Below are positions 1 through 6,097 of a stretch of 6,097 nucleotides of DNA, in pieces. The DNA comes from Selaginella moellendorffii (Eukaryota > Plantae > Lycopodiophyta): contig NW_003314396.1 in assembly GCF_000143415.4 (NCBI RefSeq), positions 234,035 to 240,131 on the forward strand, in the 5' to 3' direction. The notes below the pieces were generated by a model. That model had not been told where the DNA came from, made no database searches, and worked only from the letters and a program-made list of their open reading frames with translations. Position 1 is the first letter of the stretch. Each line of letters starts with the position of its first letter. The position numbers and the translations under genes were made by a program.

Positions 1-910
1 ATATAAAGAAATTTAAATATATTATATTAAACCTTCTATATACCATTCATGAATTTTCTGATATATTATAGTTCTAGCATAACCATTCATTTATCATCAT
101 AAAATTTCAGCATTCATAACAGTGCTATAAAGCCTTAATTATGAATATAAATACATGAATATAGGGAGATAATAATCTTATTTCAGATTTATAAAAACAA
201 CTACAGAAATAATGTTTATGATATATAATAGAATACTTTCTATTTTAAATATTACTCTCAAAATGCATGAATATAAATATTAGGTAAAAAAGGAATATCA
301 ATGATAAATATGTAAAATATTATAATTTTATAAAAGAAAATATAACACATAAAGCTAACATCTTTCACTTATTGTTATGCAATTCCAGAACTTTCAGTCT
401 GAAATGATGAAAAGAGAAACTCCATAACAATGTTTATATTTTTTAAATTTAAAAGATGTATGCACTTTAGGTGAGTTTTTAAATATATATTAAATATATT
501 TTTAACATCATTATAATTGAGTGTACCTAAGTAACACATACTTTATTAAGAGGAGAAATTATATAGTTTAATAAATCATGAAACAATAAGATTTTTATCA
601 CTTATATAGAGATTTCAAATAAAAAAAAAATTAGTTAATAAAAAATGACTCATCTGAGCATTGGATCCCACAGTGAGAAATTCCATTTATAGAATATCCA
701 AGACTTCAGTCAACAATCAGAATTTTAAATATGATATAATGTACTGAGTTATATTTATTATGTTATGATGTTTGTTGGTAATGGAGTCAATTGTTGAAGA
801 TATTTTTAATATAAATATTATGATATGTTTAACTATATATCTTATAATTATGATTATGTTAAAAATTACACTCTTTGAAATTATTAAAATATCAGAAATA
901 AACACAATGC
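1..910 (+). other. AT-rich non-coding region, probably in part the body of the non-autonomous Helitron ending at 937
   Basis: Strongly AT-rich with no credible exons or ORFs, directly upstream of the Helitron end signal. The 5' end is not securely located; A|TC at 716-718 is only a weak candidate. Confidence 0.45.
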
Positions 911-1022
911 TCCCAGCATAGCTGGGACTTTTGCTAGTACTCTTTATTTAAAGTTGTTATTTTGGCATCGGTGTCACATATTCCATTTTTAGAATATCCA
1001 TTTTTACTTATGGTAGATGCTC
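657..1022. mobile_element. Possible degenerate Tourist/PIF-Harbinger-like MITE remnant
   Basis: The left end GAGCAT (657) and right end ...TAGATGCTC|TCA (to 1022) resemble GAGCATC-type TIRs. The 21-nt motif ATTCCATTTWTAGAATATCCA lies near both ends (680-700, 980-1000; 20/21 identical). The TIR match is short and the TSD is not clean. Confidence 0.3.
911..937 (+). mobile_element. Helitron 3' terminus (subterminal hairpin + CTAG, followed by host T)
   Basis: TCCCAGC-ATA-GCTGGGA is a perfect 7-bp GC-rich stem with a 3-nt loop (911-927) in AT-rich DNA. It is followed by CTTTTG, CTAG (934-937) and T938. This matches the established Helitron 3' signature (16-20 nt hairpin ~10 nt before CTRR, insertion at A|T). 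Confidence 0.75.
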
Positions 1023-1210
1023 TCAATTCAACGATCCAGATCTGTGATGCTCCAAAGCAATGGTGAGGATTGTTACATGAGCTTGGTTTTAGGTTTAAGA
1101 AACGGTTAATATGGCTGTCCGTATCTGGAGCATATTGGATGCTAAAATTTTATTGTGGGAGAAGAAGGGCACGGATGAGAAGTAGAGCTTTCCCGTCCAG
1201 TATATTACAC

Positions 1211-1722
1211 ATCCAAGAGCTCAAGAAGAATGGGACATCAGAGGTGATTTTTGTTTGATATCTGTTCCTCATTACCGAAGCTCGCTGCCACAGATTCTGG
1301 AGTGCACAAGAGATTGTTGGACTTCCAGGGAGTAGTTAGTGGAAAAGGTAGCTGACCTGTTTCATCACTTTGTTTCATTTCTGTGCTGCTGCAGAGTGAC
1401 AACTTGCACACCAAGATAGAGGAGAGAAGCTGTAGTAAAAGTAAGCCCACACCCCATCTCTGTGGCCGTGTGTCTGAATCCAATATTGCAGGGAAGAGGA
1501 ACGTCAGCTCCAGAAGAAGAAAAAGAGACGAGCAAAAGGCCCTTCCTGTCTGTCATTTTTGGACGAGGTCGACAGTGACACTGATGAAAGGGAAATGACA
1601 GCGATGAGGGCGAAATTGACAGCACTGGTATGGTTTGGCAGCTTCAATCAAATCCAGTAAAAGATGAGAGGTGGCAGATGAACGGAAAAAATAAAAAAGA
1701 CTGGGCAAGTTTGGGATCTCAC
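1211..1722 (+). pseudogene. XCT: Decayed fragment of XAP5 CIRCADIAN TIMEKEEPER (FAM50/XAP5 family)
   Basis: Exon pieces IQELKK..GTSE | ILE..EIVGL..RE*LVEK | ..NLHTKIEE | EEERQLQKKKKRRAKGPSCLSFLDEVDSDTDE..DST | DERKK*KRLGKFG match the recalled XCT order IQELK..TS.EIL.TAFKKETVGLVTRE.YVEKRVNIR.K.EEE..EEELQL.KR.KR..G..RLSF..GK.GKDP. GT-AG introns lie at 1244-1293, 1348-1394, 1441-1491 and 1628-1677. Stops, frameshifts and internal deletions are present, and both ends are truncated. Confidence 0.9.
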
Positions 1723-2152
1723 CAGTGTGGGAAAGACTGGGTAATGCTTTGTGTGTTCGTGTTTTTCCAACCATGCTGTTCGTGATTCCAGCGGAAGTTC
1801 TCGAAGGCCAGCGAGAGTCGAGCTAGGAGAAGTTCAACTCGCAAAGCTCTTGGCAGGAAAGAGGTGGATCAGACGCCATAAACACGTAAACCTCCTATTT
1901 TCTTTCATTTTCTTTCATTTTTTTCTTCAGGAATTCCATCTCTTGTTGCCAAGCCGCTGGGGTGTAGGGAATTAAAATGCCTGATCCAGTAAATTCATGA
2001 AGCCTTGTTCCGCTATTCCTGACGAACACTGTAGGTACTCCAAAGGCCTCAGCTACGATTCTATACTGGACTGGGACAGGAATGCTGCTTCTCGATCTTC
2101 CTCGCATTCGTTATTATTCTTCTCAGAACTTGGTAACCACAATTTTCACTAA
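1720..2152 (+). pseudogene. Unidentified spliced gene fragment A (probable 3' end of a gene)
   Basis: Phase-0 GT-AG introns 1741-1791 and 1864-1930 give HQCGKDW|RKFSKASESRARRSSTRKALGRKE|EFHLLLPSRWGVGN*NA*SSKFMKPCSAIPDEHCRYSKGLSYDSILDWDRN...NFH*. Internal stops at 1973 and 1982; final stop at 2150-2152. Family not recognised and frame inferred. Confidence 0.5.
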
Positions 2153-2286
2153 AATATAAAACAAGCACTGACTAAAGTGACGCAGATACCCAAGTTAATT
2201 CAAAAATCTGGACCGCATGCTGGTATAGTGGCATAAAAAAAATTACGATGCTAATCAAAATCTCTCTCTCTTGCACTTCTTTTTAG

Positions 2287-2620
2287 GTGAAAGTTGTTCT
2301 TTTTTTTGACACAAGAGAGCGTCCACTTCCATTCGTAAGAGAAGCGGCCAAGAAGTACTCCGAGTTGATGTCTTTCGGATGTATTTTGTGGAGGCAAGAG
2401 GAAGCTTCGATTGGAAAAGCCGGTAGTTTTAGTGATAATCACGTGAATTGATTCATGCTTTTGCGTGTGAAGCAGGATTGGATTAGAGTTGACACCGGCA
2501 GTAGTTTTCATCAAAGATCCAAGTGTCCAGCCCATAATTGTTTATGATAAGAATCTTCTTTGTGGCAGCTTTGAGGATTTCTTTCACTTTGCGGGTAAAT
2601 TGACCCGTGACTCCTTCTCA
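2287..2620 (+). pseudogene. Fragment of a DNAJC16-like DnaJ/thioredoxin-fold protein gene
   Basis: VKVVLFFDTRERPLPFVREAAKKYSELMSFGCILWRQEEASI.. | IGLELTPAVVFIKDPSVQPIIVY | GKLTRDSF resembles the recalled plant motif KV..FSKTGERA.PFVRQAAKDY....F..VLWREEESS.W....ESAPAIV..KDPG.KPVVYHG. Intron 2423-2475 is intact. Intron 2547-2594 appears to have both splice sites mutated (AT...GG). Confidence 0.7.
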
Positions 2621-2722
2621 TTTCTCTTGATCTCTGTGGCTAACTTGGTTCTTGTTGCGCAAGAGCAAGTAACAGAGGGCTGTTTGGGAGTTCAAGATTT
2701 TATTTCTTTTATTCCTTTCCAG

Positions 2723-3259
2723 ACAACCAACGACCTTTGGGCTAAACACTCTAAAGTCGTTTATCTAAACTCTTGGGATGCTATTAGAAAGGTTCATAAA
2801 GTTATGTTTAGTCTGATGACTTCTCCAGTTTTCTTGTGTAGATTCAAACTAGTGGCGAGAAACTGACTCCACCATTTTCGGCCTGTCAAATCTCTTGGTT
2901 TTGGTGACACAGGAAGGTGAGTTTTTCCATAGTCGTTTCTTATATATGAGATTATAAAGCCTTTTTGTGATGCAAGTGTACATTTAGCATAGTTGAAAGG
3001 TTTCTCCCAGTATTTTGCCATGAAGAGCACAGATAAGAGCGTCATAATAAGCAGAAACAAGGTGATATTTCTGTCTTGAAACTTGCTCTGATCTTTTGAA
3101 CAGGTTCATTGTGCATGTGCTGGAAGAGAGATTCTTGGATTGATCTTGCTTTCTAAATTGACTTTTTCCTTGCAGTTTGCGACTCATGTTTGCTTAGCAA
3201 TAGACTTTTATCCTGCAGGGGAACTCTTTCTTCAAATGGAGAAACAACCACTAAAATTC
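2723..3259 (+). pseudogene. PHOT: Decayed phototropin fragment (linker after LOV2/J-alpha plus AGC kinase subdomains I-V)
   Basis: Exons: 2723-2791 TTNDLWAKHSKVVYLNSWDAIRK; 2842-2916 IQTSGEKL(fs)HFRPVKSLGFGDTGS; 2977-3061 VHLA*LKGFSQYFAMKSTDKSVIISRNK; 3104-3142 VHCACAGREILGL; 3176-3259 FATHVCLAIDFYPAGELFLQMEKQPLKF. These match phototropin DLWANHSK..WxAIQK / HFRPIKPLGSGDTGS / VHLVEL..FAMKAMDK..NRNK / VHRACAEREIL / THICLITD.CPGGELF, with introns at the recalled PHOT positions. Stop at 2990; frameshift near 2868; the DHPFLP segment is deleted. Confidence 0.93.
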
Positions 3260-3475
3260 GTTGATCGAGCTCTCCAATCCAGTGTTCAGGTAGCATTTTT
3301 CTCTTTTTGGTTTTGTACTTGTAAGATCCAGTTTTTGACTGTGTTTTTTCTCTTTTCTCTCCAGTTGCAGGGGATTGCCATGAGCATTAAGGGCAGAGCC
3401 TAGGATCTGCGTTGGTTGACTCTGGGATCACATTGCCTCTGGGCACATTTAGTTTATGAGACAATGATGGCAACT
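3260..3475 (+). pseudogene. Unidentified spliced gene fragment B
   Basis: VDRALQSSVQ | intron 3290-3364 (GTAG...long pyrimidine tract...CAG) | 111-nt phase-0 exon LQGIAMSIKGRA*DLRWLTLGSHCLWAHLVYETMMAT | GTATGT donor at 3476. One stop at 3401. Confidence 0.5.
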
Positions 3476-3725
3476 GTATGTTAGAATCAAATAAATTTTG
3501 AAGTTCACATTTCTGATGTTGTGGTTGAAGGGGATGTTATTTCCTCTGATCACTTGTCACAATATTTCCCAGAATTTATATTTTTGTTTGTGAAATCAAA
3601 TAAAATTAATATGAGTCGTTTTCTATACAAACACTAAGGGTAGTTAAGTTTTTTTCTTTAGGTTTTACAAAAAATGGAAGAGGATGTTGAGAACCGGGAA
3701 ATTTGGAAGTTTCATAAGCATCAAC

Positions 3726-4040
3726 CTTTTAGAGTTAATGGCAGATGTTAATCCTTCTGCCCTACATCACATGGAGAGGCAGAGGGCATAACATTTATTT
3801 ATCTCATAGATGACACGTGCAAGTTCATCAGTGTTGACAAAATATCGCCAGACATGGCAACACTTCCAAGGTCCCAAAGAATGTCATCATGGTGACATCC
3901 AAATGCATGGCGCAATCTTGAATTTTCATCCTGTTAAACCACAGTTCCACATAAGAACATTCCCAGCTTGCAGACCTATAATACAGGATAATACTTCTCG
4001 GCTATAACAATGAAGACAAATAAGGTGATAGCATGAACTT
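3726..4040 (-). pseudogene. Unidentified spliced gene fragment C
   Basis: Minus strand: ..IAEKYYPVL* | intron 3975-3931 (GT-AG) | exon 3930-3803 DENSRLRHAFGCHHDDILWDLGSVAMSGDILSTLMNLHVSSMR | intron 3802-3762 (donor AT, acceptor TAG) | exon 3761-3726 AEGLTSAINSKR. Splice phases are consistent; family not recognised. Confidence 0.45.
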
Positions 4041-4128
4041 TGAGATTTGTGTGAGCAAAGCCGGGCATGTGGTTATAATTCGGTCTGGATCACTCTGATT
4101 TGTTTTCACTTTCCTTTTGAAACTGCAG

Positions 4129-4965
4129 GAAAAGACATGGACAACAAAACCACCCCGAAAGCCTGAAGTAATGAAAAGAGAGCCAAACCAGGGATCGATC
4201 TTGGTAATGACAAAGAGATCGCGGAAGAGCAAGTTCACACGTCCAGGAAAATGGTGACTGGCAATCTTTTAATAGACTTGTCTGCTAATGAGATATTATG
4301 CAGATTGTTATAAGGGCTACAAGAAAGCAGGTGCAGTAGCATTTAGTGACCGCGATGCCATGGTTATTACTTCAAATTACATGTCCAACATTTTTCATCA
4401 CAAGAAACTTTTAGTAGTGGCCAAATGGAATGCCGTCCTTTCAAAGATCCAGCATATGACAAGTGTTGGCTGAACAAAACATTGGAATACAGTCAGTTCC
4501 AATCACTTGAGACAGACGTCGTGCGTCTCGACTTTATGTGCTGCTAAGGTAAAGTGATAGATCACAGAGAGGTGTCTCAAAATAACTGTGTACAATATCA
4601 GCCTCAAATGCTGACTGATGAGAACAGAAAGATCATTCTTGACAGTGTTTACATGTGTGCCTCTCTGGATTCATCAAAGCCAAGGTAAGCCCACTGAATT
4701 TATCTGGTCCTTAACAGCATTTTCTTTGCAGATTTGTCGATGCTTTGGAGCCAAACGAAGTTCTGGACTTATTTGAAGAGGACTTTGCAAGCTTTGGGAG
4801 CATGCAAGACAGAAAACAAACAGTGTTATAACGATGAGATCTCGTGTTGGTCATCCAATCCATCAATCAGCTCTTGCTGGATTTGGTCAGGAATTTCAAG
4901 CATTTTCGGATCTACTATATAGCAAACGAAAAATGATTTCTGCAATTAATTGGAACGTGAACAGC
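4129..4965 (+). pseudogene. DNAI3: Decayed fragment of axonemal inner-arm I1/f dynein intermediate chain IC140 (WDR63/DNAI3)
   Basis: KPGIDLGNDKEIAEEQVHTSRKM | IVIRATRKQ..GAVAFSDRDAM | ETFSSGQMECRPFKDPAYD..AEQNIGIQSVP.. | NNCVQYQPQMLTDENRKIILDS..SKPR | FVDALEPNEVLDLFEEDFASF.. | EFQAFSDLLYSKRKMISAINW follows the recalled WDR63/IC140 order KPWVS.GSEKEI..FGAP..FSD..MECRPFKDP..QY.PRE..ALQQNE..F.DD..EYQSFTDL..K.I..V.W. Introns at 4254-4303, 4363-4403, 4685-4731, 4834-4890 and probably 4521-4560. Several frameshifts and a stop at 4508. Confidence 0.85.
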
Positions 4966-4967
4966 AA

Positions 4968-5551
4968 CAATTAAAAACGGTTCTTGCAAGAATGATGACC
5001 TCCATCACTCATGAATGCCAAATTGCGAGGAAAGTAGAATCAAGTCAATGGGTTTTGCTAGGGTAACTGCCGTCAATGGCCGATACATCATTGGAGTATG
5101 TTCTATGACCAAGAGTTCATAAGAGAAATCGGCATCCTTTCTCCTCTTCTTGGCGCTTCTCAGGCAGTAGTTGGCATTCCTGATTCAGAAACTTCACCTA
5201 TGAAAACATGGGTGGAGCTATAAGTTCAGACCAGCAGACCATTCAGAAGGCAAGATCCAACACATATCTTCAAGCTCCAACCTTGTGAGCAGGCTAGAAG
5301 TAACACAACCACCATCGTTCTCCTGGAATCCCGCCTTCTGCAGGAACAAGAACAAGAATCCCAAAGCTTCACATTTCACAGGTTTCTTTGGTTTTAGGAA
5401 GCAAAAAAAAACATGCATACCAGTCTAGTAAAAGATGCTGCTCCTGATAACAGCTTGTGAATCTCCCCTACCCCAGTAGCAAGATTAAGATAGCTCCCAG
5501 ACAATACTGGTTTCCACATTAAGAAAATGAATTGTTGGACTCCTCTTTTCT
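4968..5551 (-). pseudogene. Unidentified spliced gene fragment D (resembles an uncharacterised plant protein)
   Basis: Minus-strand exons: 5551-5421 (..YLNLATGVGEIHKLLSGAASFTRL), 5337-5240 (KAGFQENDGGCVTSSLLTRLELEDMCWILPSEW) and 5197-~4968 (*SF*IRNANYCLRSAKKRRKDADFSYELLVIEHTPMMYRPLTAVTLAKPIDLILLSSQFGIHE*WRSSFLQEP). GT-AG introns 5420-5338 and 5239-5198 have matching phases. Three TGA stops. Confidence 0.6.
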
Positions 5552-5580
5552 CTGTAAACAATGAGTCATTCTTGCACAAT

Positions 5581-6092
5581 CACAAAGATGAAGAGAGCAA
5601 ACTTCGCCTCCTTCAAAGGATTATAATTGAAAATTTAGTTCTGTAGGTAGAGTGGACGCTGAGAACCAAGTTTGAAATTATATGAAAGGAGACTTTGAAA
5701 GTTCGTAACCCATACAGGCCGAGGGTGTCTATAATTAAAAATTGCTATCACACTTGACAAGGTAAATGCTCCTTTTTTCTTTTCCTATTTTTATTTCTTT
5801 GCATTCCTCTTTTTGTGACAGAGTTTTCTTCTGCTGCTTTCAAGCGTGTCCTACAGTCATTGTTCATAGATCCTCAGGCACCGCTATTGAGAAAGCTTGA
5901 CTAGAAGGAACTTGTTTACGGCTGTGGAGTGGGAACTCAATTGTAATGATGCCACACATCCCACTGGATAGACTAACTGAGTTGAAGCAGCAGGTTCAAG
6001 AGTATGTGAAGATGTAAGGGATGATGGGGAAGGTGGGGCCTCTAGGATTGATGTTGGCATGGACACTTTTGCTGTGTCATCGAGCTCACCAG
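5581..6092 (+). pseudogene. Unidentified spliced gene fragment E (runs off the window)
   Basis: HKDEESKLRLLQRIIIENLVL*VEWTLRTKFEII*KETLKVRNPYRPRVSIIKNCYHT*Q | strong intron 5762-5821 | EFSSAAFKRVLQSLFIDPQAPLLRKLD*KELVYGCG (fs) NSIVMMPHIPLDRLTELKQQVQEYVK.. | GTATG donor at 6093. Confidence 0.55.
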
Positions 6093-6097
6093 GTATG

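What the first reader, a model, noticed from the sequence alone, without database searches (positions are those of the whole stretch)
1211..6097. Dense concatemer of about nine intron-containing fragments of unrelated genes
Seen: pieces of XCT, a DNAJC16-like gene, PHOT, IC140/WDR63 and five unnamed genes abut with little or no spacer. Breaks often fall mid-exon or mid-intron. Seven are on + and two on -, and all retain introns, so they were copied as DNA rather than retroposed. Established: Helitrons (best known in maize), Pack-MULEs and Pack-CACTAs carry such multi-gene cargo. Inference: this is the cargo of a large gene-capturing element or a repair-stitched 'gene scrap' array. About nine donors in 5 kb is high, and I know of little description of this in seed-free plants.
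Basis: partly seen in the sequence, partly recalled or inferred. Interest (0 to 1): 0.8.

Follow-up and report, generated by a model that had tools for sequence, protein, structure and literature searches.

The report
Helitron carrying scraps of several genes
This spikemoss (Selaginella moellendorffii) stretch is the front part of a multi-copy rolling-circle jumping gene (a Helitron) loaded with dead, intron-containing scraps of host genes, one of them shown to come from the blue-light receptor phototropin; this is a well-known Helitron habit, here seen in a lycophyte.

Summary
The mosaic is real, and it is transposon cargo. One named fragment is confirmed by tools. Window 2617-3257 is a decayed piece of a phototropin gene running from the hinge into the N-lobe of the kinase. 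It matches phototropins with tblastn E of 1e-25 to 1e-27 and keeps three introns (50, 60 and 42 nt). An 89%-identical contig from a run guessed to be RNA skips the second and third introns at GT..AG and ends at the edge of the first. The names XCT, DNAJC16-like and IC140 could not be tested, because every family, structure and word search on these short decayed exons came back blank.

The array is not unique DNA. Up to 9 distinct contigs at 80-99% identity cover single positions, and several bridge the same junctions. The window's only canonical Helitron 3' end (7-bp hairpin plus CTAG, then T) sits at 911-937, exactly where GC jumps from 22% to 41%. The array therefore begins at 938 as the 5' end of the next Helitron in a head-to-tail pair, not at 1211. 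Segment 5113-5646, one of the minus-strand fragments, is inverted in this copy relative to other copies.

The verdict is a non-autonomous Helitron with multi-gene-fragment cargo, a new member of a known kind. This scan has already noted gene-fragment-carrying Helitron stacks elsewhere in this genome. The element's 3' end lies outside the window.

The parts
631..937 (+). Tail of the upstream Helitron, possibly a complete short element. It is AT-rich and ends in the hairpin 911-917/921-927 (loop 918-920) and CTAG at 934-937, followed by T.
   Evidence: This is the only hairpin+CTRR+T site on either strand, against 0.057 expected per shuffled window. The DNA fold is -6.9 kcal/mol, z -2.1. A 21-nt motif at 680-700 recurs only at 980-1000. 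The 5' limit near 631 is an estimate from a weak alignment.
938..1210 (+). 5' terminal, non-coding region of the cargo-carrying Helitron. It includes the family motif at 980-1000.
   Evidence: GC and CpG content change at 937/938. Summed contig depth is highest in the 900-1073 bin (that bin also covers the upstream element's hairpin and CTAG at 911-937), and one contig diverges after 1018. Another copy reads CTGCTAG, then TCAA, then the sequence from 939 on.
1211..1880 (+). The apparent exons are 1211-1243, 1281-1346, 1394-1440, 1492-1627 and 1787-1878.
   Evidence: Splice-site reading of the sequence. A contig from run X7 matches from exactly 1492, a predicted 3' splice site, at 89% identity. 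A 1373-nt contig spans 961-1961 at about 95%. The name rests on my recollection only; Pfam and PDB searches were blank.
1881..2258 (-). Unnamed fragment. Its longest clean reading frame is on the minus strand, 1898-2110 (71 codons).
   Evidence: contigs covering 1879-2074 and 1913-2088. The Atlas recognition score of 2421 marks it as protein-like, but no relative was found. The strand is inferred.
2259..2616 (+).
   Evidence: An exact contig covers 2259-2607, and shared loose ends fall at 2616/2617. The name is untested.
2617..3257 (+). Phototropin fragment, from the hinge after LOV2 to kinase subdomain V. Exons are about 2633-2791, 2842-2913, 2974-3059 and 3102-3257. Retained introns are 2792-2841, 2914-2973 and 3060-3101. 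It has in-frame stops, one frameshift and deletions of 7 and 3 codons.
   Evidence: The representative search found 28 hits, with the full-length ones matching at their kinase start. Those hits have two LOV/PAS domains plus Pkinase, and sources name them phototropin. tblastn gives E 1e-25 to 1e-27 and hits only this stretch.
3258..4270 (.). Several unnamed exon-like pieces on mixed strands, for example 3258-3290, 3364-3476, 3661-3790, 4129-4252 (+) and 3802-3933 (-).
   Evidence: Splice-site reading. A contig covering 3199-3401 bridges the PHOT/next junction at about 92%, and further contigs cover 3605-3832 and 3847-4239. No family hit.
4271..4830 (+).
   Evidence: Reading frames. Seven distinct contigs differ from the window at 4310. 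The name is untested.
4831..5112 (.). Unnamed segment that ends at the left inversion breakpoint.
   Evidence: joints at 5112/5113.
5113..5646 (-). Gene fragment with minus-strand exons 5553-5421 and 5337-5282, separated by an 83-nt GT..AG intron. The whole segment is inverted here relative to other copies.
   Evidence: The table lists 'opposite strands' joints 5112<->5635-5645 and 5113<->5646/5647 for six contig instances in runs X1 and X4. The exon structure was read.
5647..6097 (+). Further unnamed pieces, with a junction shared between copies at 6031/6032. The array runs off the window's end.
   Evidence: Loose ends at 6031/6032 appear in three runs. An exact 292-nt contig covers 5806-6097 and bridges that junction.

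Best explanation
Window 938-6097 is the 5' portion of a non-autonomous Helitron, a rolling-circle DNA transposon. Its body consists almost wholly of DNA-level copies of pieces of unrelated host genes. These were picked up stepwise and then amplified together as the element copied itself. The pieces are dead cargo: they carry stops, frameshifts and deletions and are depleted in CpG. The element sits head-to-tail behind another Helitron whose 3' end is at 937.

Shown here: the phototropin origin of one piece, intron retention, multi-copy status, shared junctions, and the neighbouring Helitron terminus.

Inferred: that 938 is this element's own 5' end, the Helitron class of the carrier (its 3' end is outside the window), and capture by template switching or terminator read-through during rolling-circle replication.
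For: 1. The only canonical Helitron 3' end in the window (7-bp GC-rich hairpin, 6 nt, CTAG, then T) is at 911-937. Only 0.057 such sites are expected per shuffled window. It coincides with a jump in GC from 22% to 41%.
2. In another copy the sequence from 939 on is preceded by CTGCTAG plus TCAA. That is a Helitron 3' end, a TCA stub, then this 5' end. It matches the head-to-tail pattern noted elsewhere in this genome.
3. A 21-nt motif occurs only at 680-700, inside the element that ends at 937, and at 980-1000, 42 nt inside the cargo element. None is expected by chance. This ties the two elements to one family.
4. The region is multi-copy. 212 contigs of run X1 lie on it at 99+/95-99/90-95/<90% identity in the ratio 30/69/65/48. 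Up to 9 distinct contigs cover one position. Summed depth is highest in the bin (900-1073) that holds the 5' terminus.
5. Junctions are shared by paralogous contigs covering 961-1961, 1762-2602 and 3199-3401. An exact contig from another run bridges 6031/6032.
6. The phototropin fragment is confirmed and its introns are retained.
7. CpG observed/expected is 0.47 and TpG+CpA is 1.25. This fits methylated, decaying repeat DNA.
Against: - The carrier's 3' end, the full TC 5' dinucleotide and any RepHel gene are not in the window, so the class assignment leans on the neighbour and on the motif.
- The window reads CTAG|TACTC, without an intact TC(A) start.
- The hairpin motif alone would arise by chance in about 5% of shuffled windows.
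- Only one of the roughly nine donors is named by a tool.
- All reads evidence comes from short contigs, so no single record spans the whole array.
- Copy numbers are rough.
Confidence: 0.72

Rival explanations
1. The array is not one element but a stack of several short Helitrons or other fragments. Each would carry one to three gene pieces and would have inserted into the next, so the high donor density would be an addition effect.
For: The window already shows one head-to-tail junction at 937/938, and possibly a 300-nt element at about 631-937. Depth varies more than ten-fold along the array, and some breakpoints (2616/2617, 6031/6032) are shared by many contigs. Earlier notes describe long Helitron stacks in this genome.
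Against: Neither a strict nor a relaxed scan found a second hairpin+CTRR+T end on either strand between 938 and 6097. The family's 5' motif does not recur inside the array. Paralogous contigs bridge several fragment junctions.
Confidence: 0.12
2. The carrier is a different kind of gene-capturing transposon with terminal inverted repeats (Pack-MULE, Pack-CACTA, GingerRoot or Sola-type). The Helitron end at 937 would then be just a neighbour.
For: Pack-MULEs and gene-carrying GingerRoot elements are documented in Selaginella lepidophylla (PMC6839031). A Sola-like element with terminal inverted repeats was noted about 14 kb downstream.
Against: The window holds no long inverted repeat or candidate terminal repeat. 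The array starts flush against CTAG|T. The 5' subterminal motif is shared with the element that ends in the Helitron terminus. The noted Sola-like element starts about 14 kb beyond the window.
Confidence: 0.08
3. The array is a non-transposon product: scraps stitched together by double-strand-break repair, or a segmental duplication collapsed by deletions. It would later have been copied a few times by ordinary duplication.
For: There are many breakpoints and small inversions. Several copies are rearranged relative to each other, with joints on opposite strands at 1424/1545, 2060/2189 and 5112/5646.
Against: Up to 9 distinct variants cover a single position across a wide identity range, which indicates repeated amplification over time. 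The array starts precisely at a Helitron junction.
Confidence: 0.05
4. The array is a working chimeric gene or regulatory locus assembled from exons of several genes.
For: Most pieces lie on one strand with intact-looking splice sites. An exact contig from a run guessed to be RNA covers 5806-6097.
Against: No reading frame exceeds 131 codons. The confirmed phototropin piece has stops, a frameshift and deletions of conserved residues. CpG is depleted. The RNA status of run X7 is only a guess, and some of its contigs are unspliced.
Confidence: 0.03

Closest known systems
Gene-fragment-carrying non-autonomous Helitrons of maize (background in PMC2575219 and PMC4528327)
   Same: The cargo is intron-containing pieces of several unrelated genes packed with little spacer, mostly on one strand and mostly dead. 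There is a hairpin plus CTAG terminus at an A|T-type junction. The element is amplified as a family.
   Different: The host is a lycophyte with very short introns (42-83 nt here). Only the 5' part of the element is visible. This copy carries a 534-bp internal inversion. Transcription into chimeric RNAs is not shown.
Head-to-tail Helitron stacks in this same genome
   Same: A Helitron 3' CTAG abuts the 5' tip of another Helitron, with a TCA stub present in one copy and absent in another. The elements carry gene fragments.
   Different: Those notes concern other loci. This window adds a named donor (phototropin) and evidence of copy-to-copy rearrangement.
Pack-MULEs and gene-carrying GingerRoot elements of Selaginella lepidophylla (PMC6839031)
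   Same: DNA-level capture of host gene fragments in a Selaginella, at 79-99% identity to the parent genes. The one donor comparison available here, at about 89%, is similar.
   Different: Those elements have terminal inverted repeats and target-site duplications. In the passage I read, two parental genes is the most mentioned for a single GingerRoot element. No terminal inverted repeat is seen here, and many more donors are packed together.

Membership tests
Helitron (rolling-circle transposon) | 3' end CTRR preceded by a short GC-rich hairpin | not testable with these tools
   For the cargo-carrying element itself the 3' end lies beyond 6097. The abutting upstream element meets the feature at 911-937.
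Helitron (rolling-circle transposon) | 5' end beginning with TC, inserted between A and T without a target-site duplication | tested here: inconclusive
   The window reads CTAG|TACTCTTT. Another copy reads CTAG, TCA, A, then ACTCTTT. The TC(A) start is therefore inferred to have been displaced by the upstream insertion. No empty site is available.
Helitron (rolling-circle transposon) | Terminal sequences shared by a multi-copy family whose internal cargo varies | tested here: met
   Summed depth is about ten-fold higher in the 900-1073 bin than in the body, although that bin also covers the upstream element's 3' terminus at 911-937. A contig diverges after 1018. The 21-nt subterminal motif is shared with the neighbouring element.
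Helitron (rolling-circle transposon) | RepHel transposase (autonomous members only) | tested here: not met
   None of the 30 longest reading-frame pieces gave a Pfam hit. This is expected for a non-autonomous member and does not exclude membership.
Pack-MULE / Pack-CACTA / GingerRoot (capturing elements with terminal inverted repeats) | Terminal inverted repeats flanked by a target-site duplication | tested here: not met
   The longest inverted pair is 34 nt at 74% complementarity and lies in AT-rich sequence. However, only one end of the element can be inside the window.
Processed (retroposed) pseudogenes | Loss of introns and a poly(A) tail | tested here: not met
   Introns of 60 and 42 nt that the related contig skips, and a 50-nt intron at whose edge its match ends, are present in the window. 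A GT..AG intron is also retained at 5338-5420.
Phototropin (as donor of 2617-3257) | Best full-length relatives have two LOV/PAS domains plus an AGC-type kinase, with a colinear match across the hinge and kinase N-lobe | tested here: met
   tblastn gives E down to 2e-27 over about 135-170 residues, and only at this place.

The most novel reading that the evidence does not exclude
A Selaginella Helitron family captures host gene pieces at a density rivalling the maize Helitrons. Its array, mostly on one strand, would be transcribed and would give chimeric RNAs or small RNAs that act on the donor genes.
Probability: 0.08. Interest if true: 0.55.

Novelty: new member of a known kind. Interest (0 to 1): 0.3.

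Why it matters
The finding shows that dense, multi-donor gene-fragment capture by Helitrons is not confined to maize and other seed plants. It also operates in a lycophyte with a small, compact genome. That bears on how old and general the capture mechanism is. It also matters for annotation, because such arrays produce false 'phototropin-like' or 'dynein-like' gene models. Beyond that it is an expected kind of element.

Tried and rejected
- Pfam on 30 stop-free pieces from both strands gave nothing meaningful.
- PDB sequence searches on seven pieces gave only chance hits.
- ESM Atlas on two pieces gave no usable hit. Piece 1898-2110(-) merely scored as protein-like.
- The word-index protein search on 2471-2863 and 1898-2110(-) gave no relatives. 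The tool's length window excludes full-length donors, so this says little.
- As a result the names XCT, DNAJC16-like and IC140 stay untested.
A joined search would probably have named more donors.
- I hoped that short hits of the representative search would be other copies of the chimeric junction. They were ordinary phototropin exon read-throughs from other plants.
- Rfam and tRNA scans were empty.
- No Selaginella phototropin was among the 120 hits listed. The donor locus could therefore not be fetched, and 'unlinked donor' was not tested.
- The organism behind run X4 is coded. It shares paralogue-specific variants with runs of organism A, so I do not claim presence in a second species.
Full report
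**Source and layout.** An earlier follow-up note of this scan places the window in Selaginella moellendorffii. The window has two parts. Bases 1-937 are very AT-rich, with 22% GC and no CpG at all. From 938 on, GC is about 41%, CpG observed/expected is 0.47 and TpG+CpA is in excess. No reading frame stays open for more than 131 codons. Even so, the sequence from about 1211 onward is full of short exon-like stretches bounded by GT..AG.

**Is it a mosaic of gene pieces?** One piece is confirmed.
- The stop-free stretch 3092-3400 was searched against 1.84 billion representative proteins and gave 28 hits. The long hits matched at the start of their kinase domains.
- Those hits have two LOV/PAS domains plus Pkinase, and one has a neochrome-like architecture.
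- Their relatives are named phototropin by NCBI and UniProt.
- In tblastn of 147 fetched proteins against the window, phototropins align colinearly to 2633-3257 with E of 1e-25 to 2e-27, and nowhere else.
- The fragment runs from the hinge after LOV2 (the DLWxxHSKVV motif) to kinase subdomain V. It carries in-frame stops, one frameshift and deletions of 7 and 3 codons.

**Reads evidence for the phototropin piece.** I laid public contigs on 900-6097 at 80% likeness or better.
- A 735-nt contig from run X7, which is only guessed to be RNA, matches 2840-2913, 2974-3059 and 3102-3257 at about 89% identity.
- It skips 60 and 42 nt exactly at GT..AG. Its match also ends at the 3' edge of a third intron, 2792-2841.
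- After 3257 the contig continues with phototropin-like codons while the window switches to unrelated sequence.

**The other named pieces.** XCT (1211-1880), DNAJC16-like (2287-2616) and IC140/WDR63 (about 4271-4830) agree with what I recall of those proteins. That is a lead, not a test. Pfam, PDB, the Atlas and the word search were all blank on these short, decayed exons.

Two indirect points support separate donors. Contigs of run X7 match separate segments and have unlike flanks. One of them begins exactly at the predicted splice acceptor at 1492.

**What carries the pieces?** Five observations point to a Helitron.
- *A Helitron 3' end at 937.* A scan of both strands for such an end (GC-rich hairpin, at most 14 nt of spacer, CTRR, then T) finds one site. 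It is the hairpin 911-917/921-927 followed by CTAG at 934-937 and then T. Shuffled windows give 0.057 such sites on average. The site lies exactly at the composition boundary.
- *A junction seen in another copy.* In one contig the sequence from 939 on is preceded by CTGCTAG and TCAA. That is a Helitron end, a TCA stub, then this same 5' sequence. Earlier notes on this genome describe Helitrons landing on or three letters inside the 5' tip of resident Helitrons and leaving TCA stubs. I tested that pattern only on this junction.
- *A shared subterminal motif.* A 21-nt motif occurs only at 680-700 and 980-1000, with none expected by chance. It links the element that ends at 937 with the element that starts at 938.
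- *Many copies.* In run X1, 212 contigs lie on the stretch across all identity classes from above 99% to below 90%. Up to 9 distinct contigs cover one position. Summed depth is about ten-fold higher in the 900-1073 bin than in the body, though that bin also includes the upstream element's 3' terminus. One contig shares only the sequence up to 1018.
- *Shared junctions.* Paralogous contigs bridge fragment junctions at 961-1961, 1762-2602 and 3199-3401. An exact contig from another run bridges 6031/6032. This argues against misassembly at those points.

**Inversion in this copy.** The joints table lists six contig instances, in two runs, that join 5112 to about 5646 and 5113 to 5647 on opposite strands. 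Segment 5113-5646 is therefore inverted in this copy relative to others. Its exons (5553-5421 and 5337-5282, with an 83-nt GT..AG intron between them) read on the minus strand here. In the other copies they would read on the plus strand, like most of the cargo.

**Mechanism.** This part is inferred from established knowledge of Helitrons (PMC2575219, PMC4528327). A non-autonomous Helitron picked up pieces of host genes at the DNA level during rolling-circle copying. The elements were then amplified, methylated and left to decay. Nothing here shows how capture happened, or that the array is expressed.

**Rivals.**
- A stack of several small elements remains possible. No internal terminus was found to support it.
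- A carrier with terminal inverted repeats is unlikely, because no such repeat is present and the array starts at a Helitron junction. However, the far end is unseen.
- A non-transposon scrap array does not explain the amplification.
- A working chimeric gene is contradicted by the damage to the confirmed fragment.

**Novelty.** Helitron gene-fragment capture is textbook for maize. Capture by GingerRoot elements and Pack-MULEs is published for S. lepidophylla (PMC6839031). My literature searches found no open paper on Helitron cargo in S. moellendorffii. This scan has noted such elements at other loci. The finding is a new member of a known kind, of modest interest.

Noticed in passing
window 631-937: This may be a complete short (about 300 nt) non-autonomous Helitron of the same family. 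It has the 21-nt subterminal motif at 680-700 and the hairpin+CTAG end at 911-937. Its 5' limit, just after an A10 run at 621-630, is only estimated from a weak alignment to 944-1152.
   Followed up: partly
window 1-630: This DNA is extremely AT-rich (about 20% GC) and has no CpG at all. Its origin is unknown. It was not covered by the reads call.
   Followed up: no
window 5113-5646: This 534-bp segment is inverted in this copy relative to the arrangement listed for six contig instances in two runs. AGTTC occurs at both inner edges (5114-5118 and 5637-5641).
   Followed up: partly
window 5806-6097: A 319-nt contig from a run guessed to be RNA matches here without a single difference and runs off the window's end. 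It could mean that this copy is transcribed, or that the run contains DNA.
   Followed up: no
window 1424-1630 and 2060-2301: Single contigs join 1424 to 1545, 1486 to 1630, 2060 to 2189 and 2095 to 2301 on opposite strands. Other copies of the family therefore carry further small inversions.
   Followed up: no
window 1576-1623: A 20-nt unit is repeated 2.3 times inside the acidic exon of the XCT-like piece.
   Followed up: no
window 2640-3335: The phototropin piece shows the highest summed contig depth of the cargo in run X1, with 9 distinct contigs at position 2662. This piece may therefore sit in more family members than its neighbours do, although real phototropin genes could add to the count.
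   Followed up: no
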